A DNA stretch of 64,000 nt, taken from positions 1 to 64,000 of IMG/VR virus record IMGVR_UViG_3300018891_000001; one strand, 5' to 3'. A program made the position numbers and the translations under genes. The notes under the pieces were generated by a model. It had not been told where the DNA came from, ran no database searches, and was given only the letters and a program-made list of their open reading frames with translations. Shown here in pieces: positions 168 through 20,414 of this stretch (within the stretch, counting starts at the first letter, position 1; each line of letters begins with the position of its first letter).

Positions 168-243
168 AAAATACCATCTCCTTCATTGTCATAAAATGGA
201 TATTTCATTCTGTGTCGATTGCGTAATATCGTCGAAATGCGAA

Positions 244-432: not shown

Positions 433-492
433 TTTTCACAACCTCCTTATTACGCTTTTTGTGTCTACTACGCATTATCGTCGGAATGTGTA

Positions 493-675
493 TTAACCTT
501 GATGCCAAGTAAGTACAATGCCTTTTTCTCTTTTTTCTTCGCATTCGATAACGTCTTGTTCTTTTACAGAATCGCCATCTACAATCAAATTTATCGCTTC
601 TGCCATTGTGTTAGCCAACACAACCGACTTTGCTAAATCGCCACAATGAAAATATTTTATTTTCCAAACTCTCAT
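493..675 (-). CDS. Hypothetical small phage protein
   Basis: ORF track 493..696; start moved to ATG 675, which has a GAAGGGGG RBS. Confidence 0.7.
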   Translation of the reverse strand: MRVWKIKYFHCGDLAKSVVLANTMAEAINLIVDGDSVKEQDVIECEEKREKGIVLTWHQG

Positions 676-716
676 TTCAAATCCCCCTTCTTTCACATTT
701 TGTGTCTGATGCTCAT

Positions 717-923
717 TTAATCTTCAAGTAGCAATTCCTCAAAAATTTCAAAAGCCATTTGACCTTCATCATTTTCTGTTTCTCCCAACGGTTCACCATC
801 CAATAATGCATAAAAACCTGCTGGAACAAGGGTTAGACAATCTTTGTGATAATATTCGTCATTAACTATTACTACATCATCATTCCAAACAAATTCATCA
901 TTACATGCGTTACATTTAGGCAT
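717..923 (-). CDS. Small Zn-finger-like protein
   Basis: CxxC (CNAC) ... HxxC (HKDC); ATG 923 preceded by GGAGG. Confidence 0.7.
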   Translation of the reverse strand: MPKCNACNDEFVWNDDVVIVNDEYYHKDCLTLVPAGFYALLDGEPLGETENDEGQMAFEIFEELLLED

Positions 924-1284
924 CCTTAATTTCCTCCATTTCCTTTTTTGTCCACAGATAACCTTGTTCAAAGAACAGATATGCCTGTTGTTTAAACGTT
1001 TCTAAATCATGAATCTTGTAACAAGCTTTAAATGCTGAATCTATTTTCCTGCCTGTACAGCGTATGTCAACCAAATAACAATGAGTGCGCTAATCGTATT
1101 GTGGGACTCGTTTCATCAATTCTAATTCTGAATACAACTTTCCTTTCTGAAAATATAAATCTCGGATTTCAATATCTGCTTCATCTTTATTGCGCTGAAG
1201 CAGTTCAATCCGTTGATCAATTTCTTGCAGTTTCTTTTCAAGATATTCAACTTGACTCAGTGCTGCTTTTTTTAATGGTTTCAT
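916..1284 (-). pseudogene. Hypothetical gene apparently split by an in-frame TAG at 1090-1092
   Basis: ATG 1284 with GAGGGAG RBS; the same frame continues 57 more codons after the TAG (RTHCYLVDIRC...EEIKDA*) with no RBS of its own. Confidence 0.45.
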
Positions 1285-4517: not shown

Positions 4518-4931
4518 TTACAAAGTCACCAAACACCCCGGAGGGGGGATTAATAACTTAATCCTAATAATTTTTTCATTTGTTGCTGCAATTCTAATTT
4601 CCCTTCTAGATAAGCCCTTTTTTTTCATTTCTTTAATCAAGAGTAATAAATGACGAGGGGGCATATGTTGTATCGCTAAAATATCTATATATTCAATAAT
4701 CGCATGAGCATCCATATTCAAATCAGATAAATATGATTGTAATGTTTGTCCTTCTTCTGAATTCTTCATAATTTTATACGAGTACTTAAAAGTATATGTA
4801 TGCACCCAAAATAACTCATGATTGTGAGAAATATGTTCCTGAATAATCGGTTCCTCCCGAAGATCGTACTTAGTAGCAACAATACAACTTGGTCGCTTTT
4901 CAACATATTATCCAATAATTAAATCTCTCAT
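4518..4931 (-). pseudogene. Hypothetical gene with premature TAA at codon 8 (4908-4910)
   Basis: RBS GAAAGGTGG plus ATG 4931 is in frame with ORF 4518..4805; a single stop interrupts it. Confidence 0.45.
4527..4547 (-). promoter_or_regulatory. Hairpin motif copy 1 (putative phage-RNAP promoter)
   Basis: + strand CACC AAAC ACCCC GGA GGGGG; upstream of ATG 4502. Confidence 0.55.
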
Positions 4932-4992
4932 ATATACATCCACCTTTCAAAAAAATATGTTATACATCTAGATAGAATGAAGCCGCAGGCTA

Positions 4993-6861
4993 TTATCCTG
5001 CGGCAATGGTTTTTTCCTTTTCTGATCTTTTTCGAAGCAATCTTTCAAATGCTAAAGTATTGACATCTTTTCCTCTATAAGAAGACTCAATGCCACCCGT
5101 TAAAATTTCTTTTGCCATTTCTGATTTCTTAAACAGTAACTGAATCATGTGTTCATCATATGATTCACTCATGATATAGTAGTAAACCGTAATATTGGCA
5201 TGTGGGTTTCCTGTTCGGTCAATTCGACCATTTCGCTGTTCAAGCTCAGTAGCGGTATATGGCAAATCAAAGTGGATCATATAATTAGCCACTTGCAGAT
5301 TTAACCCTGTAGAACCTGCTCGAGTAGAAATAAAAATTTTAGTGTACGGATCTTCTCGGAATTTTTGAACAGCATACTCTTTCTCTCGATCTGACATTTG
5401 ACCTGTATAGAGAACAGAATGAGTCAGCCGTTCATAAATCATGCGAGCCATACGTTCATATTCAGTAAAAATAACAATTTTAGAAGATGGCTCATCGTGA
5501 AAAACTTGTTTGACAAACTCCTGCAATTGATCCAACTTAGGCGACTTCCGAATATCTTTTTCGGATAATCCTAACTCTTGAATGATTGACTTAGACATTG
5601 GTGATGCTTCTGGATGCACTAAAAGTTCTGGGGAATCACTGTTTTCAATTAAGAAAGTTTGCAAACCCTGAATAATACCATCGTAATATTCTTTTACTTG
5701 TTCTGGACTCATAAGCTGTCCATTAATCACTTTTGATCCCGTAACATTACGGGTTTCTTCTTTCAATTCTTCCATCTTTCTCAAGATATATTCCTGAATT
5801 TTCTCTTGAGCATCCGTCATCTCTAAGAATACGTGAGAATGCTGTACTTTTGGTAATTGCTGCTGAATTTCCGGCATTTCTTTGGTTCTGCGAATAAAAT
5901 GAGGTGCAATTCGATAATACAATTCCCCTAAATTAAAAGAGCCCGTAATACCATATCTTTTACTGTATTTGCAGTATCGTTCTCTAAAAAATTCCCACGG
6001 CCCCAGTATATGAGGATCTACAAAATGAAATAAGCTCCAAACTTCTTCTGCTTTCGATTGAACGGGTGTTGCTGTAGCAATAAAGCGATACGGAATATGC
6101 ATCAAATTATAGCAAGCTTTGGCATTTTGAGAAGGTTCAATATTTAAATATGAATCTGTTACGCCCGATTTAATCTTTTGGGCTTCATCTAATGCAACAA
6201 TATCAAAAGAAATTTTCTTAATCTCATTCATGTACTGAGAATTTCTTAATGTTTCGTAATTAACAACTAGATAACGAATATCTTGACGAGAAGCAAATCC
6301 TTTAATCAGTTTCTTTCTTTTTGTGGTACTACCATAAACCGCAATAGCGGATTCTCCTGTAAATTTCTCGATTTCTCTTGCCCATTGTCTCTTGAGTGAA
6401 TTTAAAGTAACAATCAATGCACGCTTGGCTTTTCCTCGATTAAAAAGAATTTGACAAGCTCCAATAATCTGAACCGTTTTTCCTAATCCAACACCATCAA
6501 ATACCGCAGCACGACCACGATCCGCTAAAAAATGAGAACCTACTTTTTGGTAAGGATACGGTTTGAGCCTCCAATTCTTAAAATCATCATCATTTTCCCA
6601 TGAAAGGTGTTTCTTTACTAATTCGTCATCAACTGCACAACCCTTTAAAATTTCCTGCAAAGGTTGATTCCAGATAATTTGATTATCAAATAATCGAAGA
6701 AGATCTCCAATGGATTCTTTCCCAAACATCCACTCTCCCGTGAGACGATTAAATGAACGACCAGCAATATTTCTAATTTTCTCTAATGTATATTCAAATG
6801 TCTCATGTGTATCTAAAATCCGAACATATAAATTTCCATACTGCTCTCGAACCTGAATCAA
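4993..6861 (-). CDS. SNF2-family (SF2) helicase/ATPase
   Basis: Walker A DGVGLGKT, Walker B LDEAQ, motif III TATP, and STRAGSTGLNLQ / EQRNGRIDRTG motifs V-VI. Confidence 0.92.
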   Translation of the reverse strand: MIQVREQYGNLYVRILDTHETFEYTLEKIRNIAGRSFNRLTGEWMFGKESIGDLLRLFDNQIIWNQPLQEILKGCAVDDELVKKHLSWENDDDFKNWRLKPYPYQKVGSHFLADRGRAAVFDGVGLGKTVQIIGACQILFNRGKAKRALIVTLNSLKRQWAREIEKFTGESAIAVYGSTTKRKKLIKGFASRQDIRYLVVNYETLRNSQYMNEIKKISFDIVALDEAQKIKSGVTDSYLNIEPSQNAKACYNLMHIPYRFIATATPVQSKAEEVWSLFHFVDPHILGPWEFFRERYCKYSKRYGITGSFNLGELYYRIAPHFIRRTKEMPEIQQQLPKVQHSHVFLEMTDAQEKIQEYILRKMEELKEETRNVTGSKVINGQLMSPEQVKEYYDGIIQGLQTFLIENSDSPELLVHPEASPMSKSIIQELGLSEKDIRKSPKLDQLQEFVKQVFHDEPSSKIVIFTEYERMARMIYERLTHSVLYTGQMSDREKEYAVQKFREDPYTKIFISTRAGSTGLNLQVANYMIHFDLPYTATELEQRNGRIDRTGNPHANITVYYYIMSESYDEHMIQLLFKKSEMAKEILTGGIESSYRGKDVNTLAFERLLRKRSEKEKTIAAG

Positions 6862-6994
6862 TTCATCTCACTCCTTTCTTTTCAAGTATGGAAAAACGAT
6901 AATTTAATTATACTACATTTTTTTGTATTTTCTCAATAAATGCTATGTTTTTCTTCTGTTTTCTTTTAAATTTTAAATATTTTTTAGAAGAAAT

Positions 6995-7172
6995 TTCGTT
7001 GGGGGGGATATAAAAAAATGGATTTTTTTCTTATTTTCTTGGGGGGAGAAATATAAAAAATAGATTTTCTCCTATTTGTCGTGGGGGCATAAAAATAAAA
7101 AATGCATTTTTCTTTATTTAGTATGAAAAACAAAAAATATGAACAATCGTAGGGGGAATTAGTTTAAAAAAA
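6995..7172. repeat. Three full ~41-bp imperfect direct repeats plus one partial copy (TCGTnGGGGG...ATAAAAAAT.GATTTT)
   Basis: Units start near 6995, 7036, 7077 and 7145 in an AT-rich intergenic region. Confidence 0.6.
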
Positions 7173-7174
7173 GA

Positions 7175-7200
7175 AAGACTACTCCCGAAGGAGTAGTCTT
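7175..7200 (-). terminator. Rho-independent terminator
   Basis: 11-bp stem AAGACTACTCC/GGAGTAGTCTT, UUCG loop on the minus strand, followed by a U-run. Confidence 0.85.
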
Positions 7201-7208
7201 GAAATGTA

Positions 7209-8198
7209 TTAACTCATTGGCCATGGAAGTTCATCTGCTGAAATTTCTCCTGTATGAAAAGGAGGTTGTGTAGCTACCGGTGTTTGATCCGGCGTTTGAA
7301 CCGGTGTAGGAGTTGCTGCCGCCGGAACAGGATTTGGAGTTCCCACATTTGGAAGTGTAAATGCAGGAACGAAGTTTCCTGTTTGCACTGGTGATGCTGA
7401 CACCGCAGGTAATCCTTGAGCTAAAGCCATTTCAAATGCTACATTCATTAAAGTCTGTTCATAAATATATGCTAATGCTTTGTATTCACTTGTAATGACT
7501 TGAATATATTCTGGAGCTGCAGCATTCGCATCAATAGCAAATGAACCATCTGGATAGATTTGATATTGATTGTTAACAACTGCAATCTTAGCACGCAACG
7601 TAGCTGGCTGATTTTGTTGTTGATATACACGATAAAAACGTGCTTTACGTGGTGCTAAATTTGCATTAAACTCCTGGAACATATCTGTGTTTCGGTCCCA
7701 ATATTTATCGGTACCCACAACATAATAGGAACCATCTCCTGTATTCGATGCCACAACTGTAAATGGAACACTCATCATGTGGAATGGAGATTGTTCATCT
7801 GTAATAGTGGCTACCACTGAAACAGAATTTTGTTGCGAAGTGACTGTTAAACGAACTTTTCCATTTGGCTCATAAATAGCACGTTTTCTGTTATCAGAAA
7901 GTGTTTCCACACCATGACCTTGCAAGAAATAATAATTTGCTGTCAAAATCAAATTATGCAATTCTGAAAAACGTGCAATATGAAGCTCTGAAAACGATTC
8001 AGCACCATCATAAAGACGAGTACCATTATCTTGAGCAACCGGATTATACTGCACAAACCATCCAGAAGTAAAAGATGAACTCATATCTGTAACGATAACT
8101 GGATATTTTGCTTTTCCGTTGCGAGTAACAGGATTTTTCACCTCTACTTTAATAGAAGATTGAATAACCTCTTTGATTTGATTTAACATACTTAACAT
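7209..8198 (-). CDS. Putative single-stranded DNA-binding protein
   Basis: Beta-rich body, Pro/Thr-rich linker and acidic-aromatic tail EISADELPW resembling SSB DDLPF tails; inference only. Confidence 0.45.
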   Translation of the reverse strand: MLSMLNQIKEVIQSSIKVEVKNPVTRNGKAKYPVIVTDMSSSFTSGWFVQYNPVAQDNGTRLYDGAESFSELHIARFSELHNLILTANYYFLQGHGVETLSDNRKRAIYEPNGKVRLTVTSQQNSVSVVATITDEQSPFHMMSVPFTVVASNTGDGSYYVVGTDKYWDRNTDMFQEFNANLAPRKARFYRVYQQQNQPATLRAKIAVVNNQYQIYPDGSFAIDANAAAPEYIQVITSEYKALAYIYEQTLMNVAFEMALAQGLPAVSASPVQTGNFVPAFTLPNVGTPNPVPAAATPTPVQTPDQTPVATQPPFHTGEISADELPWPMS

Positions 8199-8242
8199 TG
8201 TTCATTTCCCCTTTCTTAAATTTGAATATGAATAAAATGTTC

Positions 8243-8263
8243 CACCAAATTCGCCGGAGGCGA
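8243..8263 (-). promoter_or_regulatory. Hairpin motif copy 2
   Basis: CACC AAAT TCGCC GGA GGCGA; upstream of the SSB-like gene. Confidence 0.65.
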
Positions 8264-8728
8264 TTAGATATATCCTTTTTCTTTAAAAGAAAAGTAACAA
8301 TTATCTCCTATGATTAAATGATCAAGGAGTTCAATTCCCATTATCTGTCCACACTCAGCTAAACGCTTTGTTGCCTCGATATCCGTCTTCGAAGGATTAC
8401 AGTGACCACTAGGATGATTATGAGCACATATAAACGTATAAGCATTGACAAGCAACAAACGCTGAAAAACATCTCGTGGATTTACGATTGACGCATTCAT
8501 AGTACCTGTTGTAACTTCAAACACACCAACACAATCATTTGCTGTATTTAGTGCTACAACAATGAATTTCTCCTGTGGTGAAGATTCCAAATTAGAAAAT
8601 ACAGAACGAATAAAATTGTATGCTACTTCAGGACAAGATAACTTTTTATCCATAATCTCATACTTCTTACTGGACTCTTTCACCAACTGAACTTGATACT
8701 TTGTGACGATTTTCTTCATTCTCATCAC
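8264..8728 (-). CDS. radC: RadC-like JAB domain protein
   Basis: EKFIVVAL, HNHPSG..PS..D and LLDHLIIG motifs. Confidence 0.9.
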   Translation of the reverse strand: MMRMKKIVTKYQVQLVKESSKKYEIMDKKLSCPEVAYNFIRSVFSNLESSPQEKFIVVALNTANDCVGVFEVTTGTMNASIVNPRDVFQRLLLVNAYTFICAHNHPSGHCNPSKTDIEATKRLAECGQIMGIELLDHLIIGDNCYFSFKEKGYI

Positions 8729-8849
8729 CTCATTTAGAAAAATTTATAAAGAAAATCCCGCACTGCTAAAACAATAAACAGTAGCGGGATTAAATATAGC
8801 TGACCAGAAAGAACAAAGATGATAAACAAAAATACACAAATGCTATAAG

Positions 8850-9104
8850 TCATTTAGCAATCACTCTTTGTTTTAAAATCAGTCTTTCAACAATATGTAA
8901 TTCATCCTCTAGCATAACAACCTGCGACATCTTAAAAAGTGCAATATCAATATTTCCTTCTGTAATATCACATTCAATTTCCTTGTTTAATAACTCAATA
9001 GCATTTGTTAACATGATTTGACGAACTTCGATAGAAGAAGAAGATAAGGCCTCACGAAGTTCTTGTCTGGATGTTACGGATTTTATCTTTTGAATTAATG
9101 TCAT
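8850..9104 (-). CDS. Hypothetical protein, 84 aa
   Basis: ORF track; GAGGAGG RBS. Confidence 0.75.
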   Translation of the reverse strand: MTLIQKIKSVTSRQELREALSSSSIEVRQIMLTNAIELLNKEIECDITEGNIDIALFKMSQVVMLEDELHIVERLILKQRVIAK

Positions 9105-9132
9105 GTGCTAAATCCTCCTCTAATCATTATTT

Positions 9133-9153
9133 CACCAAACGCCCCGGAGGGGC
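9133..9153 (-). promoter_or_regulatory. Hairpin motif copy 3
   Basis: CACC AAAC GCCCC GGA GGGGC; upstream of ATG 9104. Confidence 0.65.
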
Positions 9154-9277
9154 TGCATACCAACACCGAAGGCGATGACCATAAAAAATATCTTTTCTAT
9201 TAATAAAAAATATTTTTTATGAAAATAAAAAATAAAAAAGACACCGAAGGTGTCTATATTGCTTCTCATCAAGCAAT

Positions 9278-9499
9278 TTAAAGCCTGCTTAGAGCACTAA
9301 AATTAGAACTCTTTTCATGAGTTGTTCCGGTTAACGATTGTAAACATGATTGAATATAAGTTGTGAGAACCTTTAAGTCTTTTGTTTTTACATTGGATAC
9401 TTCATATGAAATATCTTTTAAAGACACATTGATTTCTGGTGTATACTCATTTGAAGGAATACGTACTTCTACAGATCCTACATGAAATTTCATTTGCAT
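9278..9499 (-). CDS. Hypothetical protein
   Basis: ATG 9499 after AAGGGGG RBS. Confidence 0.7.
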   Translation of the reverse strand: MQMKFHVGSVEVRIPSNEYTPEINVSLKDISYEVSNVKTKDLKVLTTYIQSCLQSLTGTTHEKSSNFSALSRL

Positions 9500-9529
9500 T
9501 TTGATTTCCCCCTTAATGTAATTACTTTT

Positions 9530-9550
9530 CACCAAATCCGCCGGAGGCGG
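9530..9550 (-). promoter_or_regulatory. Hairpin motif copy 4
   Basis: CACC AAAT CCGCC GGA GGCGG; upstream of ATG 9499. Confidence 0.65.
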
Positions 9551-9578
9551 CTCCACTAACCAAAAGTTAGACGATCAT

Positions 9579-9680
9579 TTACATAAAATAAAAAATCAGA
9601 AAGGTTAATATACCGGAAAAACAAATCATTCCTATAATTTCTTCCCCTGAATACAATAAACCAGAATCTATATCTTTCAT
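9579..9680 (-). CDS. 33-aa hydrophobic peptide
   Basis: GAGGTG RBS; MKDIDSGLLYSGEEIIGMICFSGILTFLIFYFM; one predicted TM helix. Confidence 0.45.
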   Translation of the reverse strand: MKDIDSGLLYSGEEIIGMICFSGILTFLIFYFM

Positions 9681-9691
9681 AATCACACCTC

Positions 9692-9770
9692 AAATTATCA
9701 AATTATCCTCTTATCAAATTATCGAGAAAACCCTAATTATCGTTGAAATAACAGGGGTTTTCTCGATAAT
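9692..9770. repeat. Four 8-bp tandem units (AAATTATC) overlapping a perfect 16-bp inverted repeat
   Basis: Units at 9692, 9700, 9708 (CTCTTATC) and 9716; ATTATCGAGAAAACCC 9718-9733 / GGGTTTTCTCGATAAT 9755-9770. Confidence 0.75.
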
Positions 9771-9772
9771 AA

Positions 9773-10081
9773 TTAGACTAATAATAATTCTAACTGTTTA
9801 AGTTCCTCATTAATTAAACGGTGAATAAGTCGTAAAGTTGTTACCCTTTCTTCATCACCATCCAAGTTGTTAATATCTATATCAGAATAATAAAATGAGA
9901 ATTCTTTAATATAACCGATTATGCGCTGAGACTTTTCGGTTTGAGCCCAGTTATTTAATACCGGATAATCAATTTTCTTTAGTAGGTATAAATACTGAAC
10001 AATATGAACAACCTCAAAATGATCGCCAGACTCCAATTCATCTGGCAAATGCCTCATAGCTTCGCAAACCGCTAATTTCAT
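9773..10081 (-). CDS. Hypothetical protein, 102 aa
   Basis: ORF track; GAAGGAGGAG RBS. Confidence 0.75.
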   Translation of the reverse strand: MKLAVCEAMRHLPDELESGDHFEVVHIVQYLYLLKKIDYPVLNNWAQTEKSQRIIGYIKEFSFYYSDIDINNLDGDEERVTTLRLIHRLINEELKQLELLLV

Positions 10082-10095
10082 ATAAACTCCTCCTT

Positions 10096-10317
10096 CTACA
10101 CAGCATGTTGTTGCAGCTTCGCCATAATATCTGCTTCTAATGATTCACGATCATGAATGTAAGTAGTAAAAGCCTGTTGCAAATCTTTAGCAGATGGCTT
10201 CTGATGTAAAACAATCTCTCTCATTGTGCCATTGTTATATTTAACACGAGCGATAATTGCAAAAGTATTATCTGGTTGACGCTGAATATAAAAACGAACT
10301 ACTTTCATAGAAATCAC
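10096..10317 (-). CDS. Hypothetical protein, ~70 aa
   Basis: ORF track; AAAGGAG RBS. Confidence 0.7.
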   Translation of the reverse strand: MISMKVVRFYIQRQPDNTFAIIARVKYNNGTMREIVLHQKPSAKDLQQAFTTYIHDRESLEADIMAKLQQHAV

Positions 10318-10646
10318 TCCTTTGGTTTAGCAATTGGAATTAAGAGAATTTGTCCCTCACGGATTTGAGAAGAATCTTCAATACGATTGACTTTTTTAGT
10401 CAGTGTCACAAAATGACGGGTATCCCATCCCCAAGGGACAAATGTATTCATATCTTGTACAACAGTAAAAAGAGTATCGCCCTTTTGCATGCGATACTCT
10501 ATATACTCAATCTGATAATCATTCATTTGTTCTATATGGAATACCAACATAAATACCATTAAAATCGATAAGAAAAAGAGACTGATGTTTTTCCATTTCA
10601 GTCTCTTACAAAATGATTTTTTTCTACGTATAGTGCTTAGATTCAT
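10314..10646 (-). CDS. Membrane-anchored LysM protein (YneA-like architecture)
   Basis: Basic N-terminus, TM helix, LysM motif YRMQKGDTL...IREGQILLIP. Confidence 0.8.
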   Translation of the reverse strand: MNLSTIRRKKSFCKRLKWKNISLFFLSILMVFMLVFHIEQMNDYQIEYIEYRMQKGDTLFTVVQDMNTFVPWGWDTRHFVTLTKKVNRIEDSSQIREGQILLIPIAKPKE

Positions 10647-10661
10647 GTTATCCTTCCTTTC

Positions 10662-10682
10662 CACGAAATTTGCCGGAGGCTA
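10662..10682 (-). promoter_or_regulatory. Hairpin motif copy 5
   Basis: CACG AAAT TTGCC GGA GGCTA; upstream of the LysM gene. Confidence 0.55.
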
Positions 10683-11195
10683 TTACGTTAATGCAACTTC
10701 ATACAAATCTTTTTTACCTTTCAAGAGATATTCTGCTGAAGAATGAATAGCCACTAAACGATGTGGCTGATCACATGTAGTTTGGTTTTGCAGATGCACT
10801 TTATAAGACAAAACACGTTCACTGTCCGTAAGGACAGCATAAATTTGTTGCCATAAATCTACATGTTGTGGAGGCTCTCCTTTCGTAGTGAGCCATCCTT
10901 GACGAACCCAGTTGTACATATGTTTATTTAGACCGGTACTGACTTGTACAACAGATGTATAAATATGTACAAACACAGGTTTTTCTTTCTTCAATTGCAA
11001 GAGTCCATGTAAAATAGCCTGAAGCGTCATACGAGTTGGTGTCGTTCCTTTCGCATAACCACCAATGGTCTTTGTATAATGCTGACCTTGAATGCAGCAA
11101 TGAAGATGAGAACACCAGCCACCGTTTCCTTCTTGGTCTGTTGTGCCGGCTACCCAAAGATTCACTTTTAATTTATCAAACTGAGCTTTACTCAT
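10683..11195 (-). CDS. RNase HI-fold protein lacking the catalytic carboxylates
   Basis: RNase HI-like segments (GGW, T..RM.L.A, YTS, G...W...GW.T..G.P..H.DLWQ); D10/E48/D70 equivalents appear as A/T/S. Confidence 0.75.
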   Translation of the reverse strand: MSKAQFDKLKVNLWVAGTTDQEGNGGWCSHLHCCIQGQHYTKTIGGYAKGTTPTRMTLQAILHGLLQLKKEKPVFVHIYTSVVQVSTGLNKHMYNWVRQGWLTTKGEPPQHVDLWQQIYAVLTDSERVLSYKVHLQNQTTCDQPHRLVAIHSSAEYLLKGKKDLYEVALT

Positions 11196-11262
11196 AGATT
11201 TCACTCCTTCATTTGAATAACAAAAAAAGCCCACACCAGAAGATGTGGACTTTATTTATGAT

Positions 11263-11538
11263 TCAAATTTTTTCATCAATGAATTTATGAATATTGCGCA
11301 AACCGTTTTGACCATAAAGAATACGAATCTTCTTATAATCTACATGACGTGGAGCGGTTTTCTTGTTATGTATTGGAATCCCACGACGATGACAATTCTT
11401 TTCAATCACATTAAGAAGGATTTTTGTGCGCTCGTATTGACCTTGATTGTAAGTACATTGAGCTTGATGAAGAATATGAAGTAAATCATCTGGCAAGAAA
11501 GATACTCGCAAACGAAATAAACGATCAGATAAATTCAT
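11263..11538 (-). CDS. Hypothetical protein, 91 aa
   Basis: ORF track; AAGGAGGAG RBS. Confidence 0.65.
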   Translation of the reverse strand: MNLSDRLFRLRVSFLPDDLLHILHQAQCTYNQGQYERTKILLNVIEKNCHRRGIPIHNKKTAPRHVDYKKIRILYGQNGLRNIHKFIDEKI

Positions 11539-11602
11539 TTCTTACTCTCCTCCTTAGACAAAATAAAAAAAGCCATCCTAAAAAGGACGGCTTTCTTAAT
11601 GC

Positions 11603-12148
11603 CTATATATAAAACGTATGAATATAACGATTAAAACGTTTGGCGTACTCAATACAGTTGGCAGTTCCGCCAGGTGTTCCATCCCAAAATGCGATCACAC
11701 CTTGAACAGAATCTACCATATATTCATTTCGAATTTGCAGTTTGTAATTGCTATGTACGCCAACAGGTGTATGGATATCTCGCATGTACAATGGTGTCTT
11801 ATCCACATACGTCACCAAGTCTGCTAACTCTAACATACGAGAATACCAATACAAAATTTCTGGATTTCTCCATATTTTTGGTTGCTCTTTATACGGTACA
11901 GCAACAATATTCTTAATATGAGGATAACGTTTCTTGAGTTGCTGTACCGTAAAAAAAGCAATTTGATCAAAGCCAATCGCTCCGCCAGACATAAATTTTG
12001 TTGCTCCCTGTTGAATTTTTTCTTCTAAAATAGGAAGCAACAAATTTCTCACAGTATACACTCCTTCATTCTTCCAGGGATCATTCCAATCAAACCCTGG
12101 AATTTTATTAGGGCGATGACCTGTGAAACACCAAGCATCTACAGACAT
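11603..12148 (-). CDS. YspA/DUF1273-like SLOG family protein
   Basis: CFTGHRP, SGGAIGFD, RNEYMVD and FWDG..GGT..CIEYA motifs. Confidence 0.85.
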   Translation of the reverse strand: MSVDAWCFTGHRPNKIPGFDWNDPWKNEGVYTVRNLLLPILEEKIQQGATKFMSGGAIGFDQIAFFTVQQLKKRYPHIKNIVAVPYKEQPKIWRNPEILYWYSRMLELADLVTYVDKTPLYMRDIHTPVGVHSNYKLQIRNEYMVDSVQGVIAFWDGTPGGTANCIEYAKRFNRYIHTFYI

Positions 12149-12175
12149 GCAAAATCCTCCTTGAGAGAATATTTT

Positions 12176-12196
12176 CACCGAACCCGCCGGAGGCGG
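12176..12196 (-). promoter_or_regulatory. Hairpin motif copy 6
   Basis: CACC GAAC CCGCC GGA GGCGG; upstream of the SLOG gene. Confidence 0.65.
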
Positions 12197-12205
12197 TCCC
12201 ACTGG

Positions 12206-12388
12206 CTAAAAGCTAGTGGGAATTTCAATAAATGATTGAAGATAATTATCACAGCCGGATTCGCAATACTTGCAATTTGGACATTCCACTGTAAAATCAT
12301 CATGTAAATCTACATTTATGTGGAATTCCGTTTCGCATTCAGGACATCTAAGATACAACATATTATTCAAAATCCTCCATATACTCAA
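12206..12388 (-). CDS. Zn-ribbon protein
   Basis: CPEC...CPNC. Confidence 0.7.
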   Translation of the reverse strand: MSIWRILNNMLYLRCPECETEFHINVDLHDDFTVECPNCKYCESGCDNYLQSFIEIPTSF

Positions 12389-12404
12389 GAATATAAACCA
12401 CTCC

Positions 12405-12626
12405 TTATTTCATCCTCAATAAAGCTGTATAAGCATCACTAAAACGCTTATATTTTTCTTTACTATAATCATCTTCATGGATAGCATACCAAGTTTGACT
12501 TTCTTGGTGATAACACAATCTGCCAATATAGTAATACCCACAACGAGAACGAAGAACCAATAACTCACTTATTTGACCATCAAGTAAACGATTCTCCATT
12601 GTTGGAACAGAAGGAATTAAACCCAT
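12405..12626 (-). CDS. Hypothetical protein
   Basis: ORF track; GAAAGGGTGG RBS before ATG 12626. Confidence 0.7.
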   Translation of the reverse strand: MGLIPSVPTMENRLLDGQISELLVLRSRCGYYYIGRLCYHQESQTWYAIHEDDYSKEKYKRFSDAYTALLRMK

Positions 12627-12670
12627 ACTATCCACCCTTTCTAATATAATAAATTACAAAAAAATTTTTT

Positions 12671-12691
12671 CACCAAATTCGCCGGAGGCGA
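12671..12691 (-). promoter_or_regulatory. Hairpin motif copy 7
   Basis: CACC AAAT TCGCC GGA GGCGA; upstream of ATG 12626. Confidence 0.65.
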
Positions 12692-13172
12692 TAGCCTTTT
12701 TTTACTTTCTAAATAAAGAACACCTTGTTCGATAAAAAATAAAAAAATACGAACACTTTGTGACAATTTTGTGAACTTTTTTGAACAAGGTAGAATTTCC
12801 CCAAGTTTTGGCGGTATATAAAGAAAGTGAACACCTTTCTTAGAAAGCAAGGGGTTGCTGTCAAAGTTATCTGACAACTGTCACAATTTTGGAATTCTAT
12901 ACCAGAAATTAAAATAAGGGTATTCCAAAATAGCACACTTTCAGATACATAGTACACATTCTTTTGGTGGCTTTGCGAAGCACACCAACAAGTACACCAA
13001 CCGATTTCTAGAAAGGCATACCCAAAACCAAGCTAATGGGGCTGGAAGACAGCGGGGACGTATGCCCTTTTCGAAAGGACCACCCTAACGGCAAATTTTT
13101 AGGAAACATTGGGGGATTGCTACGCATATCATCATGCATATCATATTCTCCGCCGCCCGCCGATAGGGGTTC

Positions 13173-13193
13173 CAACAAATCTGCCGGAGGCGA
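13173..13193 (-). promoter_or_regulatory. Hairpin motif copy 8
   Basis: CAAC AAAT CTGCC GGA GGCGA; no clear gene immediately downstream. Confidence 0.5.
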
Positions 13194-14163: not shown

Positions 14164-14184
14164 GAGGAGGGCAAAACGCCCTCC
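14164..14184 (-). terminator. Rho-independent terminator of the RNA polymerase gene
   Basis: AGGAGGGC/GCCCTCCT stem followed by a long U-run on the minus strand, immediately after the stop at 14188. Confidence 0.8.
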
Positions 14185-14187
14185 TAT

Positions 14188-17100
14188 TCATGAATAGCGA
14201 GTAACTGATTCCAAATAGAACGTCAATGACTTCTTATTGACTTGAAAATCCTTTACTTTTGCAACAAATCTAGTTGCACCAGTAAAGAAAGTAACATACT
14301 CTGGATAAATCGAAGCTACACGTTGCTTCTTGACATACACTTCATGACGAAGATTGCCAAGTTCATCAGCTTGAACCATAACTGCAATATGATTAGCCCA
14401 ATTTTGAATCATATTAGCAACCATCTCTGGCGTATAACCCGGAGTAAAGTTACCAATGTTCACTTTCGTAACCTCAAGTTGATCAAAACGAGTTACTTGA
14501 GGTTCTTTTAATTTTAAGTGTTCTGTTCCAGACACCTTACGTAAAGCTGCAACAAATTGATGTTTAGCTACAACCCAAGGGAAACTTAACCCACGAGCAG
14601 GCTCATCCACCGTTGCGCCACGCTTCGAAGCTGAAACAGAATAAGTCATCTGATAAGCAACCAAGCCAATATAAGCTGGATCAAATTGTTCTGAAAGAGC
14701 CATAAACTCTGCTTGACACTTTTCAGTAATAAAGTTGAGCGAATCATCTAGATCACGCTTCAACTGATTAATATATTGTTCTTTGGCATAATCACTTGCA
14801 AAAGAAATAAACTCAAGTTGAGACATTTCGGTATCAAACTTACGATACGCATTCGAAATAGCCGTATTGTACATAGATTTAATCATGCGTACATTACTTA
14901 AAACGGCCATTTGTTCCACATGAGACTGTGGCACTTCAACCACAGTGGAAATCGCACTGAGAAGATTATTCTCTGCATATTCACTTCTCAACTTCTTAAT
15001 ATCAGCAATAAATTCTTGTTCTTCCCATTTCAACATATATTCATGAACACGAGAAAGAACAGAATCATTCTGAATACCATTTGACTTCCCTTTTAAATGA
15101 GCGAACCAAGATGGACTTGCCCAAACATAACGACGTAATTTCTTATTGTACGTTGCAACTTCTGCTGGTGGATTTTCAATGAAAGAAAGTTCTTCTTTCA
15201 ATGCTTCTTCATATGCACCACCATGTTTTGCACGGTCAATTTCCCAAGACTGAACCCATGCAAGTAAATCAATAAGTTCTTGGAGTTCATTCACTCTCTT
15301 AATAATCGCTTTTGCTGCTGACATACTGCCAGCTTCATAATGAGAACGACCCTTATACCACAAAGCACGAACCGCATCAGCAAGTTTCGTAGCATAATCC
15401 GTTAACTCACCAATACGGTTTGGCTTTAACGTTTCTGCTACATACTCTAAAGATATTTCATACATCTTTAACTGTAACTCACGAGTATATTGACTCTTTG
15501 TAAAAGTAAATTTATACTTAGACATATCCACTGTACCCTTAAATGGGCAACCATTGTCGAAGAGAATCTGCCCATTCTCTTCCCAATAGTGGATATCTAA
15601 GAAAGCAGGAGCAGATTTGCATGCTTCTTCAACCGCTGTGACCAATTCTGGTTGAGTCATGCACAGTGATGTATCACCATCACAATCTGCTCCACCTTGA
15701 GAAATAGTATTAAAGTCATGGCACGACATAATAATCATGCCATCAAAAGCATCTTTCTTCATATAGCGTGAATAAGCACGTGCTTCAAGAACACGAGATT
15801 GCCCCATAGTCATCTGCGGATTACGAGCAACAGCTAGTTTGCCAACATACACCACATGACCATCTTTCTCTAACATAAAGCACGTACCAGGTTTAATTCC
15901 TTTATTCGGATTCACAAAAAGTTTTCCATTTTTACGAATCTCTTGATCCGTGCCACGCAACTTATACGCATCTAAAATCGCATACGGATCCATAATGATA
16001 AAACGATAATTCGCTTCAACCGGAATTAAACCCGATTTCCACTCTTTAATCAACTCTTGTAATAAAGAAAGAGCCTTTTCTTTCAAGAAAACATCTTGGT
16101 AAGAGTTCGGCGCATAATGTAAATAAAACGACAACAAAGAAACAAGAGTAGAATCTAACAATTCATCTTGTTCCTCTTCTGAATACTCTTCAAGTTGCAA
16201 CAAACGATCATGCCCTAAATACTCCTTCATCAATTCTACATCATGAAGTAACAATTTTGCACGATCCAAATGAGGTTTTAAAAGTTTAATCATAGTATCG
16301 GCACTCAATTTCATACCATGTATAAATTGATACGGTAAACTCACATATCTCTTTTTAAAGCGCATTGGTGCTCCAAAAAGAGCCACACGGAACTGCAATT
16401 GAATATCTTCAATTACATCTTCCAACGTATCTGTAGAAGCTTTGAATGAAGACATTGGAATCACAATATCTTCTTCAAAATACTTCTCTAAATCTGGAAT
16501 ATACACAGCATTGCCTTTTACAAAACCGTTAAACAAACGAACAACACCATTCTGAAAATGACGGCCAAACTCCGCTTCCGCTAAAGTCTTAATACGATTA
16601 TTGAAATACATTTGACCATCACCGGCTACTTGTTCAATAGGATGATCAGCCGCATCAAACACACGACTTTTCTTTGTATCTTTGCCAAAAGCTTTAAACT
16701 TACCTTGTGATACTTCTGAATAAACATCTTCGACAATACGAAGAGATACATTTCCGCCGAGAATAGAAATATCACCATTCTCGTGACGTACTACTTCTTT
16801 TCCAAAACGAATAAAGTTCGACTTAACACTATTCGAAAGCGTTAAGCCAAAACGTTTCATAGCTTTGACATAATCTAATTCATAAACAATCTCACCATTT
16901 TTATCTTGGCCCTTCACCTTCGCAAAGGCTAAAGGATTCATACCAAGAATATTCAATACATCCACAGGATGAATAATATGCTCTGCCACACCAACTACTT
17001 GGACTTGACGTTCTTGAGAAGGAGAACGCAAAGCATAACGAACCATACGTTCTACACCTTCATAATCAATATAACTCATTCCTAATCGAATAATATTCAT

Positions 17101-17667
17101 CGCCTTTGTAATATCCTCTTCTTTTAACGGTTTTAAATCAATGAAGAAAACGTGAGGCAATACATATGCATACACCTCACGTTCTATAACTTCACCATCA
17201 ACTATCTTTCTAACTGTCACCATACGTGGACCATCAAAAATAAATGGAGACAACATCTCTGCTGCATAAGAACCAGAAATCTCTTTATATCCTGATTTCT
17301 TATCTTCACCAACGAAGAAAGAATCAGAATAATTGCGAGTAGAAATATAACGACCATCAACAAATTCGATCGTATCTAAGTCTGCTTGTGCTACAATAAC
17401 ACGAATATTCTTGATACGACGAAGTTTCTTAGGAATTGGATGAGATTCCAAGAACTTCTTAAATACATGAGCTTGTTGTGGTGCAACACCTGCCAACTCT
17501 ACAGGATTCTCTAATACCTCCACTACATTTGCACCACTCGCAACCGCTTCCACAACTTTAGAAAAGTTTTTCGTACCAATTGCCGTTAAAGGCGAAAAAG
17601 AAGCCAAGCGTTCAACCACTTGGCTCACAGACTGAATAGGATTTAATACATTTTTCACATTGTTCAT
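14188..17667 (-). CDS. Single-chain two-barrel RNA polymerase (SPbeta YonO / RNAi RdRP-like)
   Basis: Catalytic GGADCDGD (DxDGD); ARNPQMT.GQ.RVLEA (RdRP RxP motif); AGDGQ and FVKG motifs; N-terminal HhH-like segment. Confidence 0.85.
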   Translation of the reverse strand: MNNVKNVLNPIQSVSQVVERLASFSPLTAIGTKNFSKVVEAVASGANVVEVLENPVELAGVAPQQAHVFKKFLESHPIPKKLRRIKNIRVIVAQADLDTIEFVDGRYISTRNYSDSFFVGEDKKSGYKEISGSYAAEMLSPFIFDGPRMVTVRKIVDGEVIEREVYAYVLPHVFFIDLKPLKEEDITKAMNIIRLGMSYIDYEGVERMVRYALRSPSQERQVQVVGVAEHIIHPVDVLNILGMNPLAFAKVKGQDKNGEIVYELDYVKAMKRFGLTLSNSVKSNFIRFGKEVVRHENGDISILGGNVSLRIVEDVYSEVSQGKFKAFGKDTKKSRVFDAADHPIEQVAGDGQMYFNNRIKTLAEAEFGRHFQNGVVRLFNGFVKGNAVYIPDLEKYFEEDIVIPMSSFKASTDTLEDVIEDIQLQFRVALFGAPMRFKKRYVSLPYQFIHGMKLSADTMIKLLKPHLDRAKLLLHDVELMKEYLGHDRLLQLEEYSEEEQDELLDSTLVSLLSFYLHYAPNSYQDVFLKEKALSLLQELIKEWKSGLIPVEANYRFIIMDPYAILDAYKLRGTDQEIRKNGKLFVNPNKGIKPGTCFMLEKDGHVVYVGKLAVARNPQMTMGQSRVLEARAYSRYMKKDAFDGMIIMSCHDFNTISQGGADCDGDTSLCMTQPELVTAVEEACKSAPAFLDIHYWEENGQILFDNGCPFKGTVDMSKYKFTFTKSQYTRELQLKMYEISLEYVAETLKPNRIGELTDYATKLADAVRALWYKGRSHYEAGSMSAAKAIIKRVNELQELIDLLAWVQSWEIDRAKHGGAYEEALKEELSFIENPPAEVATYNKKLRRYVWASPSWFAHLKGKSNGIQNDSVLSRVHEYMLKWEEQEFIADIKKLRSEYAENNLLSAISTVVEVPQSHVEQMAVLSNVRMIKSMYNTAISNAYRKFDTEMSQLEFISFASDYAKEQYINQLKRDLDDSLNFITEKCQAEFMALSEQFDPAYIGLVAYQMTYSVSASKRGATVDEPARGLSFPWVVAKHQFVAALRKVSGTEHLKLKEPQVTRFDQLEVTKVNIGNFTPGYTPEMVANMIQNWANHIAVMVQADELGNLRHEVYVKKQRVASIYPEYVTFFTGATRFVAKVKDFQVNKKSLTFYLESVTRYS

Positions 17668-20407: not shown

Positions 20408-20414
20408 AGTTTCA

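What the first reader, a model, noticed from the sequence alone, without database searches (positions are those of the whole stretch)
14188..17667. Single-chain two-barrel RNA polymerase with an apparent N-terminal HhH DNA-binding domain
Seen: GGADCDGD, ARNP, AGDGQ and VKG motifs in one 1159-aa chain. The first ~55 aa (LASFSPLTAIGTK..KVVE...EVLENPVELAGV) resemble the HhH region at the N-terminus of RecD2 helicases. Knowledge: SPbeta YonO is a DNA-dependent single-peptide RNAP related to eukaryotic RNAi RdRPs and is, as I recall, shorter than this protein. Inference: the extra HhH module could be the promoter (hairpin) recognition element, removing the need for a sigma factor.
Basis: partly seen in the sequence, partly recalled or inferred. 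Interest (0 to 1): 0.75.

Follow-up and report, generated by a model that had tools for sequence, protein, structure and literature searches.

The report
Jumbo-phage single-chain RNA polymerase, extra domain
This gene of an uncultured 216-kb phage encodes a single-chain RNA polymerase of the known YonO/QDE-1 kind. It carries an extra small N-terminal helical domain that may grip DNA, but nothing yet shows that this domain reads the phage's hairpin promoter-like sites.

Summary
The ORF (14188-17667, minus strand, 1159 aa) and all four catalytic motifs are real. It is a single-chain two-barrel RNA polymerase:
- Pfam RdRP lies above its cut-off.
- The YonO profile PHROG 8308 scores E 3e-12.
- A confident AlphaFold model (pLDDT 90.6) matches QDE-1 and RDR2 over residues 86-1055 (Z 24-26).

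The closest published counterpart is gp99 of Bacillus jumbo phage 0305phi8-36, proposed as a phage RNA polymerase in 2007. The kind is therefore known.

Two modules are new relative to QDE-1. One is an N-terminal five-helix domain (residues ~9-76), which gp99 and YonO also lack. The other is a C-terminal beta domain (~1066-1159).

The helix-hairpin-helix (HhH) reading of the N-terminal domain is only weakly supported:
- No Pfam, PDB-sequence or Foldseek match is significant.
- The weak shape matches are dominated by SAM and (HhH)2 domains and by the duplex-binding 2B subdomain of UvrD-type helicases (TM 0.62).
- Two relatives carry a literal PGIG; the window's copy is degenerate.
- The domain is not basic.

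Eight covarying hairpin+GGTGAAA sites lie downstream of the gene, each just before a start codon. They are plausible promoters for this enzyme. That the N-terminal domain reads them is untested and unlikely.

Verdict: new variant of a known kind, moderate interest.

The parts
14188..17667 (-). Whole gene: 1159-aa single-chain two-barrel RNA polymerase (stop codon included)
   Evidence: ORF list. Pfam RdRP above cut-off. PHROG 8308, the YonO family, E 3.4e-12. AF2 model pLDDT 90.6, pTM 0.83.
17440..17643 (-).
   Evidence: Translation. Conserved in about 35 of 53 family members. Separate model pLDDT 85.5 with five helices. Outside the QDE-1-aligned range. Weak shape matches to SAM/(HhH)2 and UvrD 2B.
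17404..17439 (-). Basic linker, residues 77-88 (PIPKKLRRIKN), joining the module to the core
   Evidence: Net charge +4 here and +2 to +5 in most relatives, while the module itself is about 0.
14503..17412 (-). QDE-1/RDR2-like core, residues 86-1055: slab, two double-psi beta-barrels, long-helix neck and head
   Evidence: VIA-align: maize RDR2 Z 26.4, QDE-1 Z 24-25 with 675-696 residues aligned over model 86..1055; P74 gp62 Z 15.7; phi14:2 gp66 Z 8.4. Foldseek E 1e-16.
16612..16626 (-). AGDGQ, residues 348-352: acidic residue D350 of the first barrel
   Evidence: G349, D350 and G351 invariant. Aligns with YonO TDGCG. Matches the invariant Asp of two-barrel polymerases (PMC2919709).
16513..16521 (-). 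VKG, residues 383-385: catalytic-site lysine K384, with R377 seven residues upstream
   Evidence: K384 at 90% or more in 53 sequences. R377 invariant in close relatives. Aligns with YonO VKG.
15817..15828 (-). ARNP, residues 614-617: the R-x-P element before the metal-binding loop
   Evidence: R615, N616 and P617 invariant. P617 at 90% or more. Aligns with YonO LRSP.
15673..15696 (-). GGADCDGD, residues 658-665: Mg-binding aspartate triad D661/D663/D665
   Evidence: Translation. At 90% or more conserved. Aligns with YonO DNDGD. The same triad is essential in YonO (PMC5467207).
14191..14472 (-). C-terminal beta-rich domain, residues 1066-1159, also outside the QDE-1-like core
   Evidence: Strands and two helices at pLDDT about 75-92. 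Not covered by any polymerase match. Kept in relatives down to about 30% identity. No family or Atlas lead.
14165..14185 (-). Intrinsic terminator-like hairpin plus T-run just after the stop codon
   Evidence: 9-pair stem with 6 GC pairs, then CTTTTTTCTT.
4527..13191 (-). Span holding eight hairpin+GGTGAAA sites. Plus-strand match coordinates: 4527-4545, 8243-8261, 9133-9151, 9530-9548, 10662-10680, 12176-12194, 12671-12689, 13173-13191. Candidate promoters of this polymerase.
   Evidence: 8 matches against 0.04 expected, all in one orientation. Each is 15-45 nt before a ribosome-binding site and start codon. 102 of 105 stem cells paired with compensatory changes. Same architecture with another stem in two related phages.

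Best explanation
The gene encodes a single-chain, two-barrel, DNA-dependent RNA polymerase of the RdRP/QDE-1/YonO superfamily. It is the counterpart of gp99 of Bacillus jumbo phage 0305phi8-36, in an uncultured 216-kb myovirus-like phage of a probable Bacillota host.

Shown: the fold, the full set of catalytic residues (D350, R377, K384, R615, P617, D661, D663, D665), and two domains added to the QDE-1-like core.

Inferred:
- The enzyme is not a virion protein. It is made early, probably by the host polymerase reading leftward from the divergent region near 20.2-20.8 kb, and its gene ends at its own terminator.
- It then transcribes the leftward block of DNA-metabolism genes (about 13.2 to 4.5 kb) from eight sites. 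Each site has a 4-5 bp G+C-rich hairpin with a 3-nt loop, followed by ATTTGGTGAAAA, with initiation probably in the GGTG.
- The N-terminal five-helix module is a clade-specific addition with a SAM-like/HhH-like shape, closest to the duplex-binding 2B subdomain of UvrD-type helicases. Most likely it acts, together with its basic linker, as a non-sequence-specific grip on duplex DNA that steadies the initiation or elongation complex.
- Which part reads the promoter is unknown. The C-terminal beta domain and the core are equally open candidates.
For: Identity:
- Pfam RdRP 34.8 bits against a cut-off of 23.8.
- PHROG 8308 E 3.4e-12. This is the YonO family: YonO itself scores 1220 bits and gp99 scores 5e-29.
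- Model pLDDT 90.6. QDE-1 and RDR2 match at Foldseek E 1e-16 to 1e-14 and Z 19-26 over model 86-1055. P74 gp62, P23-45 gp96, phi14:2 gp66 and Pol II Rpb1 follow.
- The motifs align collinearly with YonO.

gp99 link:
- hhalign probability 98.4%, E 6e-15.
- A DUF1273/YpsA-like gene lies downstream of the polymerase gene in both phages.
- The tail sheath is 33% identical to 0305phi8-36.
- gp99 carries no virion-protein note, although other virion proteins in that record do.
- Hardies et al. proposed that gp99 drives a phage-specific middle-promoter class (PMC2147016).

DNA template: YonO, gp66 and the P23-45 enzymes are DNA-dependent (PMC5467207, PMC10770324).

Cascade:
- All 8 hairpin sites lie downstream of the polymerase gene and its terminator, and none lies upstream.
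- Sigma-70-like sites are fewer than in shuffles, 48 against 65.8.
- No sigma-like protein was found among neighbours.

Hairpin sites: covariation; the same layout in two phages whose polymerases are 62-63% identical.

N-terminal module:
- Conserved five-helix domain.
- Atlas TM 0.62-0.63 at 2.6-3.0 A over 69-71 of 79 residues to UvrD-like 2B, and TM 0.41/0.50 to an HHH_6/HHH_3 cluster.
- VIA rows are dominated by SAM, Af1502, AdnB, AddA, PcrA, Rep, FANCM/FAAP24, RuvA, ERCC1, DisA and TEFM-N.
- P0001 and P0002 carry PGIG.
- The GIG motif of the UvrD 2B subdomain binds duplex DNA (PMC3797037).
Against: - No activity, template or transcription start data exist for this enzyme or any close relative. 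The host is unknown.
- The shape matches of the N-terminal module are weak: Z 5.2 or less, where the tool warns that Z under 8 may be only a common arrangement. Foldseek finds nothing in the PDB or Swiss-Prot.
- There is no sequence similarity to E. coli UvrD.
- The window's own first hairpin reads SPLTAIG, not GIG.
- The module has net charge about 0, which is unusual for a DNA-binding domain.
- The hairpin sites could act in RNA rather than in DNA.
- Only 64 kb of the 216-kb genome was visible, so a second polymerase or a sigma factor elsewhere cannot be excluded.
- No convincing sigma-A promoter lies directly before the gene.
Confidence: 0.6

Rival explanations
1. One reading: the N-terminal module is an HhH domain that recognises the DNA hairpin of the promoter, so the single chain needs no sigma factor.
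For: The module is extra relative to YonO, gp99 and QDE-1. Hairpin sites exist and covary. The window and P0003 share the SPLTAIG form, whereas P0001 and P0002 share PGIG and their phages use a different stem and loop. That is one coincident change. No sigma-like gene was seen nearby.
Against: HhH and GIG motifs contact the backbone of duplex DNA without reading sequence (PMC3797037; general knowledge of the HhH family). HhH status is itself unproven. Net charge is about 0. The module is kept in relatives about 30% identical whose loci show no such hairpin motif. The single coincident change is confounded by overall divergence: the module is 64-66% identical to P0001 and P0002, the same as the whole protein. 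P0003's contig is too short to show its promoters.
Confidence: 0.15
2. The N-terminal module is a SAM-like protein-protein interaction domain rather than a DNA binder. It could serve self-association (QDE-1 works as a dimer) or docking to a host or phage partner that supplies specificity.
For: The largest single group of VIA matches is SAM domains (3tad, 3bs7, 4pzn, 6o0s, 1z1v and others, Z 3.5-5.2). Foldseek's weak list holds harmonin-homology and p63/p73 SAM domains. The surface is neutral to slightly acidic. High pLDDT (89-96) in the full-length model hints that it packs against something.
Against: All matches are weak. The best-fitting shapes by TM are UvrD-type 2B subdomains, not SAM. PGIG/PGLG in 8 of 22 members and the G-V-A...Q-A second turn look like HhH hairpins. 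The adjacent linker is strongly basic.
Confidence: 0.2
3. The hairpin+GGTGAAA elements work in RNA, as 5' stabilisers, processing sites or a binding site for a translational regulator. The polymerase would then use other, unrecognised promoters.
For: Covariation supports pairing but cannot tell DNA from RNA. The elements sit 8-30 nt before ribosome-binding sites inside a co-oriented gene block that could be polycistronic. Terminator-like hairpins are enriched on the same strand.
Against: The unpaired ATTTGGTGAAA tail is as conserved as the stem, and is kept between phages whose stems differ. That fits an initiation region. All copies lie after the polymerase gene's terminator. A 4-5 bp stem is a weak RNA stabiliser. 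By my recollection of the N4 system (not checked here), N4 virion polymerase promoters have the same layout: a short stem, a 3-nt loop, and a start about 11 nt from the loop centre, which here falls on the first G of GGTG.
Confidence: 0.25
4. The enzyme is an RNA-dependent RNA polymerase like its eukaryotic structural relatives, acting on phage or host transcripts.
For: The best structural matches are RNA-dependent enzymes (QDE-1, RDR2), and the Pfam family is named RdRP.
Against: Every phage member tested so far is DNA-dependent (YonO, PMC5467207; P23-45 enzymes and phi14:2 gp66, PMC10770324). QDE-1 itself also uses DNA templates (PDB titles). The gene sits in a dsDNA phage beside candidate promoters. 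Hardies et al. reached the same view for gp99 (PMC2147016).
Confidence: 0.05

Closest known systems
gp99 (orf99) of Bacillus thuringiensis jumbo phage 0305phi8-36, 1218 aa, annotated 'hypothetical DNA-directed RNA polymerase' (PMC2147016)
   Same: Same superfamily and size class. hhalign probability 98.4%, E 6e-15 over about 750 columns. Both hit the YonO profile PHROG 8308. Same genome setting: a jumbo myovirus, the gene near one genome end with its own transcription unit, a DUF1273/YpsA-like gene downstream, and a related tail sheath. A phage-specific promoter class and lack of sigma factors were already proposed for it.
   Different: Only about 23% identity, with no BLAST-level match. gp99 residue 36 aligns with window residue about 126, so gp99 has no room for the N-terminal module, and a profile of the module finds nothing in it. 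gp99 continues for about 350 residues past the aligned part, and that tail is unrelated to the window's C-terminal domain. Its 21-bp promoter motif was not described as a hairpin, and my hairpin+GTGAAA scan found none at its right end.
YonO of Bacillus subtilis prophage SPbeta, 839 aa (PMC5467207)
   Same: Single-chain two-barrel polymerase with the same ordered motifs: SxSQxR, GDG, VKG, RxP, DxDGD. Profile-level kinship through PHROG 8308. In both phages the polymerase gene is followed by a terminator and a long ORF-poor stretch before the genes it would transcribe.
   Different: Pairwise similarity is not significant (BLASTP E 0.2, hhalign probability 5%). YonO is 320 residues shorter and lacks the N-terminal module and most of the C-terminal third. 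YonO serves late genes of a temperate siphovirus. Here the candidate targets are DNA-metabolism genes of a jumbo myovirus-like phage.
QDE-1 (Neurospora) and plant RDR2, eukaryotic RNAi RNA polymerases (PDB 2j7n, 7y7r, 7w82, 7rqs)
   Same: Best structural matches: 640-700 residues superposed, Z 19-26, covering slab, both barrels, neck and head. Pfam family PF05183.
   Different: 12-15% identity. The eukaryotic enzymes act in RNA silencing and have their own N-terminal regions (for example the PH-like and RRM parts of RDR2). Neither the five-helix module nor the C-terminal beta domain of the phage protein is matched.
2B subdomain of UvrD/PcrA/Rep/AddA/AdnB helicases with its GIG helix-loop-helix; (HhH)2 and SAM-like five-helix domains
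   Same: Five short helices of similar size. Atlas TM 0.62-0.63 and rmsd 2.6-3.0 A over about 70 residues. VIA Z 3.6-5.0 to the AdnB, AddA, PcrA and Rep 2B regions, and Z 3.4-5.2 to SAM, RuvA, ERCC1 and FAAP24. PGIG/PGLG in several orthologues. The UvrD GIG motif binds duplex DNA (PMC3797037).
   Different: No detectable sequence relation. All scores lie in the range the tools call uncertain. The window's own first turn is SPLTAIG. The tools gave no residue-level alignment, so I could not check that the family's PGIG superposes on the helicase GIG.
Phage N4 virion RNA polymerase and its DNA-hairpin promoters (from my own knowledge, not checked here)
   Same: Candidate promoters built on a short G+C-rich stem with a 3-nt loop (GGA on the template strand here), followed by a conserved tail at about the distance where N4 initiates.
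   Different: N4's enzyme is a T7-like right-hand polymerase, an unrelated fold. It is virion-packaged and needs single-stranded or supercoiled templates. None of this has been tested for the present enzyme.

Membership tests
Two-barrel RNA polymerases, RdRP/QDE-1/YonO branch (Pfam PF05183) | Family profile match above the curated threshold | tested here: met
   PF05183 E 1e-8, 34.8 bits against 23.8. All six close homologues carry PF05183. PHROG 8308 E 3.4e-12.
Two-barrel RNA polymerases, RdRP/QDE-1/YonO branch (Pfam PF05183) | The eight invariant active-site residues (Asp of the first barrel, Arg and Lys, R-x-P, D-x-D-x-D; PMC2919709) | tested here: met
   D350, R377, K384, R615, P617, D661, D663 and D665 are all present and invariant in A1. 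They align with the YonO equivalents. The R-to-K spacing is 7 instead of 5.
Two-barrel RNA polymerases, RdRP/QDE-1/YonO branch (Pfam PF05183) | Fold: two double-psi beta-barrels in one chain with QDE-1-like slab, neck and head | tested here: met
   On a predicted model only (pLDDT 90.6): QDE-1 and RDR2 at Z 19-26 and Foldseek E 1e-16; Rpb1 active-site region Z about 7.
Two-barrel RNA polymerases, RdRP/QDE-1/YonO branch (Pfam PF05183) | Template-dependent RNA synthesis abolished by mutating the Asp triad | not testable with these tools
   Shown for YonO (PMC5467207), not for this protein.
YonO family in the narrow sense (PHROG 8308) | Full-length similarity to YonO | tested here: not met
   Only residues 411-684 match the profile. 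BLASTP E 0.2 and hhalign probability 5%. No tblastn hit to any of 50,697 phage records. It is a relative at superfamily level, not a YonO orthologue.
0305phi8-36 gp99-like jumbo-phage polymerases | Significant profile similarity plus shared genome setting | tested here: met
   hhalign 98.4%, E 6e-15. DUF1273/YpsA-like gene downstream in both. Related sheath. Domain make-up differs at both ends.
Helix-hairpin-helix / (HhH)2 domains | Profile match to an HhH family above threshold | tested here: not met
   Window N-terminus: no Pfam match at E up to 10. 2 of 22 members at E 0.03-0.1, about 14 bits against 27. No HhH chain found with the domain profile in PDB sequences.
Helix-hairpin-helix / (HhH)2 domains | Two helix-G-h-G-helix hairpins joined by a connector helix | tested here: inconclusive
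   Five helices in the right order. First turn: PGIG/PGLG-type in 8 of 22 members but SPLTAIG in the window. Second turn: A-G-V-A...Q-A, with the second Gly replaced.
Helix-hairpin-helix / (HhH)2 domains | Fold match to solved (HhH)2 or SAM-like domains | tested here: inconclusive
   Foldseek PDB best E 1.3, Swiss-Prot best E 1.7. VIA Z 3.4-5.2 to SAM, Af1502, RuvA, ERCC1, FAAP24 and helicase 2B. Atlas TM 0.62 to UvrD 2B and 0.41/0.50 to an HHH_6 cluster.
Helix-hairpin-helix / (HhH)2 domains | Binds DNA | not testable with these tools
   Net charge about 0 for the module and +4 for the linker. No DNA co-folding tool was available.
Hairpin-type phage promoters (N4-like) | Short conserved stem-loop at a fixed distance before the start site, kept by compensatory changes | tested here: inconclusive
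   Stem-loop and covariation are met. The start site is unknown. The cognate polymerase is of an unrelated fold, so this is at most an analogy.

The most novel reading that the evidence does not exclude
A two-barrel single-chain RNA polymerase that starts transcription at DNA-hairpin promoters, a strategy known only from the unrelated T7-like polymerase of phage N4. An appended HhH/2B-like module (or the C-terminal beta domain) would serve as the built-in specificity element, so one polypeptide would do the work of core plus sigma.
Probability: 0.12. Interest if true: 0.8.

Novelty: new variant of a known kind. Interest (0 to 1): 0.5.

Why it matters
Single-chain two-barrel polymerases are the simplest relatives of the cellular transcription enzyme. 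How any of them finds a promoter is still unknown; the YonO paper leaves this question open (PMC5467207).

This family offers a tractable case:
- About 40 clusters at 50% identity, all from uncultured jumbo phages.
- A confidently modelled 1159-aa enzyme with two add-on domains.
- In three genomes, a clear covarying candidate promoter, with a stem that differs between phages and a tail that does not.

That allows direct swap and deletion experiments on promoter recognition. It could also yield a compact, orthogonal transcription system. If the enzyme is ordinary in this respect, the value is limited to better annotation of 0305phi8-36-like phages.

Tried and rejected
Searches that led nowhere:
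- Megablast and tblastn of the gene, and of its catalytic third, against 50,697 GenBank phage records found no relative. The same held for two distant family members.
- PDB sequence search with the protein and with the N-terminal profile found nothing useful.
- Foldseek of the N-terminal model against the PDB and Swiss-Prot found nothing below E 1.
- A search for free-standing small homologues of the module found none. P0093 and P0040 are probably contig-end fragments, not separate proteins.
- hhalign of the module against YonO, gp99 and E. coli UvrD gave probability below 0.5%.
- Atlas feature searches of the N- and C-terminal parts were uninformative.
- The hairpin+GTGAAA scan in 14 loci with polymerases about 30% identical, and in SPbeta and 0305phi8-36, found no such motif. 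A crude 9-mer count found no obvious alternative.

Ideas considered and rejected:
- GTGAAA as a sigma-type -35 box. In five copies the start codon is only 16-29 nt downstream, so a -10 box and a start site would not fit.
- The hairpins as terminators. No T-run follows, the stems are short, and true terminator-like sites are separate.
- A virion polymerase fused to a structural protein, as in phi14:2 or P23-45. The gene stands alone among early and DNA-metabolism genes.

Other:
- Rfam found nothing in the ORF-poor kilobase after the gene.

Full report
**Observation**

The window holds one long ORF at 14188..17667 on the minus strand, 1159 aa, starting at ATG behind a good ribosome-binding site.
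- They are invariant among the six closest homologues.
- K384, P617 and D661/D663/G664/D665 stay at 90% or more in a 53-sequence family alignment.

**What the protein is**

- Pfam RdRP (PF05183) matches above its curated cut-off: E 1e-8, 34.8 against 23.8 bits.
- PHROG 8308 matches at E 3.4e-12. I checked that this profile is the YonO family: YonO itself scores 1220 bits over its full length, and 0305phi8-36 gp99 scores 5e-29.
- An AlphaFold2 model built on 53 family sequences is confident (mean pLDDT 90.6, pTM 0.83).
- Foldseek places the model with QDE-1 (E 1e-16), plant RDR2 (1e-14), P74 gp62 (1.6e-4) and crAss-like phi14:2 gp66 (1.3e-3).
- VIA-align superposes 640-700 residues of QDE-1 or RDR2 on model residues 86-1055 at Z 19-26. 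Rpb1-type subunits of the cellular and ASFV polymerases follow at Z about 7 on the active-site region.
- The eight residues invariant in all two-barrel polymerases (PMC2919709) all have counterparts: D350, R377, K384, R615, P617, D661, D663, D665.
The polymerase assignment is as firm as sequence and a predicted fold can make it.

**Where it comes from, and the closest known relative**

- The window is the first 64 kb of IMG/VR contig UViG_3300018891_000001, 215,870 bp.
- The window also carries a portal, major head protein, tail sheath, terminase, helicase, RNase H and DHH phosphoesterase.
- The sheath is about 33% identical to those of Bacillus jumbo phage 0305phi8-36 and Moorella phage MTATph1.
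- No GenBank phage has a BLAST-level relative of the polymerase.
- Public metagenomes hold six close homologues at 31-63% identity. They also hold 41 cluster representatives with E below 1e-30, most of them 1050-1460 aa apart from fragments, on contigs of up to 229 kb.
- 0305phi8-36 orf99 was proposed in 2007 to be an RdRP-family, DNA-directed polymerase serving a phage-specific promoter class in a genome without sigma factors (PMC2147016).
- A profile of the window's clade matches gp99 at probability 98.4%, E 6e-15. In both phages a DUF1273/YpsA-like gene follows the polymerase gene.
- YonO is a more distant relative. The pairwise comparison is not significant, but the motifs align in order.

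**What is extra**

The structural matches stop at residues 86 and about 1055. Outside them lie two modules.
- An N-terminal helical module, residues about 9-76, is joined by a basic linker (PIPKKLRRIKN).
- A C-terminal beta-rich domain spans about 1066-1159.
- gp99 residue 36 aligns with window residue about 126, and YonO residue 126 with window residue 189. Neither has room for the N-terminal module, and a profile of the module finds nothing in either.
- The module is not peculiar to this protein. About 35 of 53 family members have it, some behind further N-terminal extensions of up to 338 residues.
- Of the 320 residues by which this protein exceeds YonO, about 200 lie after the DxDGD motif.

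**Is the N-terminal module HhH?**

Sequence evidence is poor.
- The window's copy has no Pfam match at E 10.
- Only P0001 and P0002 touch HHH_5 or RecR_HhH, at E 0.03-0.1.
- The domain profile finds no HhH chain in PDB sequences and no small free-standing homologue.

The pattern is suggestive.
- It reads helix, P-G-(I/L/F)-(G/H/K), helix, connector, then N-P-x-x-L-A-G-(V/I)-(A/P)-x-x-Q, helix.
- Eight of 22 members have a G-h-G first turn (PGIG, PGLG, PGFG, EGLG or AGLG). The window has SPLTAIG.

A separate model of residues 6-84 is good (pLDDT 85.5) and has five helices.
- Foldseek finds nothing significant in the PDB or Swiss-Prot.
- A Foldseek-independent scan of 48,161 chains gives only Z 5.2 or less. 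Its top rows are mostly SAM domains, Af1502, the 2B regions of AdnB, AddA, PcrA and Rep, FANCM/FAAP24, RuvA, ERCC1, DisA and the TEFM N-domain.
- A shape search of the ESM Atlas puts UvrD-like 2B subdomains first (TM 0.62-0.63, 2.6-3.0 A over 69-71 residues), with an HHH_6/HHH_3 cluster lower down.
- In UvrD the 2B subdomain binds duplex DNA through a GIG helix-loop-helix (PMC3797037).
- Against a DNA-binding role, the module's net charge averages about 0, whereas the linker is +2 to +5 in most members.

My reading is a SAM-like/HhH-like five-helix module, possibly a non-specific duplex grip. HhH membership is unproven.

**The hairpin sites**

- The minus strand carries eight copies of (C/G)CCTCCGG(G/C), about three variable bases, then TTTGGTGAAA, between 13191 and 4527. 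All are in gene orientation, against 0.04 expected.
- Each lies 15-45 nt before a ribosome-binding site and start codon.
- The two phages whose polymerases are 62-63% identical have 8 and 7 copies of the same layout with a different stem and a 4-nt loop, GCCCT-T(A/G)CC-AGGGC. The same ATTTnGGTGAAA tail follows.
- Over 21 distinct copies, 102 of 105 stem positions pair, against 24-54 when the partner is slid. Compensatory changes occur at several positions within each genome.
- All copies lie downstream of the polymerase gene and its terminator at 14185-14165. Sigma-70-like sites are fewer than in shuffles.

This fits a cascade: early expression of the polymerase, then its use on a middle-gene block, as Hardies et al. 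suggested for gp99.
- A -35 role for GTGAAA is excluded by the short distance to the start codons.
- By my recollection of the N4 system (not checked here), initiation about 11 nt from the loop centre would fall on the first G of GGTG.
- An RNA-level role cannot be excluded.
- Loci with polymerases only about 30% identical, as well as SPbeta and 0305phi8-36, lack this motif.

**Does the module read the hairpin?**

Nothing found supports it beyond co-occurrence.
- One coincident change exists: SPLTAIG with the CGCC-TCC-GGCG stem-loop, against PGIG with GCCCT-TACC-AGGGC. It is confounded by general divergence, and the one informative third genome (P0003) is on a contig too short to show promoters.
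- The module's presence in relatives without the motif, its neutral charge, and the backbone-binding habit of HhH and GIG motifs all argue for a general rather than a specific role.
- The C-terminal domain is an equally open candidate, and I could not characterise it.

**Verdict**

The kind has been known since 2003-2017, and its jumbo-phage representative since 2007.

Three things are new:
- a distinct, metagenome-only clade;
- two appended domains;
- a clean, covarying candidate promoter in three of the genomes examined.

Together these make promoter recognition by a single-chain two-barrel polymerase experimentally approachable. The specific claim that an HhH domain replaces sigma by reading the hairpin is possible but unlikely (about 0.15).

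Noticed in passing
window 4527-13191, minus strand (eight sites); L001 14218-20821 and L002 14220-19962, plus strand: Hairpin (4-5 bp G+C-rich stem, 3- or 4-nt loop) followed by ATTTGGTGAAA, just upstream of start codons. The stem differs between phages and covaries within them, while the tail is shared. Candidate promoters or RNA elements.
   Followed up: partly
window 13195-14165, minus strand; L001 13484-14215, L002 13487-14217, L003 5872-6668, L005 3878-4313: About 1 kb with no convincing ORF lies directly after the polymerase terminator in all five related phages. Short conserved patches are present (for example CCCCTAAT and GCAGACTTCCCC..GG), and there is no Rfam match. SPbeta has a comparable yonN-yonK gap that holds an unannotated non-coding RNA and the YonO start site (PMC5467207). 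Possibly a non-coding RNA.
   Followed up: partly
window 29143-32502, plus strand: A group I intron (30259-30543, Rfam 86.9 bits) follows an ORF matching the terminase large subunit (29143-30129). A LAGLIDADG-type ORF lies at 30826-31656, and 31900-32502 may be the downstream exon.
   Followed up: partly
window 17759-17824 (also 9181-9239 and 32515-32551): Runs of ATAAAAAATAAAA-type A/T-rich repeats lie immediately upstream of the polymerase gene and at two other intergenic places. No good sigma-A promoter is seen between them and the gene. They could be a second promoter class or an UP-like element.
   Followed up: no
window about 20200-20730: GC skew changes sign at about 20 kb, where leftward and rightward gene blocks diverge. 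The best sigma-70-like site reading leftward is at 20782-20753 (TTTACA, 18 nt, TACAAT). It may be the early promoter that reaches the polymerase gene.
   Followed up: no
window 23975-25162, plus strand; also L001, L002, L004: An Alp7A/ParM-like actin (PHROG partition protein, E 5e-49) is kept a few kb from the polymerase gene in all related phages examined.
   Followed up: no
window 22737-22811, plus strand: tRNA-Asn (GTT). Related loci L001, L004, L009 and L017 show repeated GGATTCGAACC-type strings that suggest tRNA clusters.
   Followed up: no
window 52280-53407 and 54181-57105; 38867-39952 and 57179-57949: Two ORFs match tail sheath profiles and two match major head protein profiles. These are possible paralogous structural genes.
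   Followed up: no
P0036, P0038, P0039, P0042, P0043, P0045 (family members of 1389-1464 aa): These relatives carry 100-340 further residues in front of the five-helix module, so the N-terminus of this polymerase family has been extended more than once.
   Followed up: no
L004 14336-18030 and L003 5935-7138, plus strand: The more distant relatives show a different repeated intergenic element after their polymerase genes: a T/C-rich run ending in CC(C)CTTCGG(G). It may be their equivalent of the hairpin sites.
   Followed up: no
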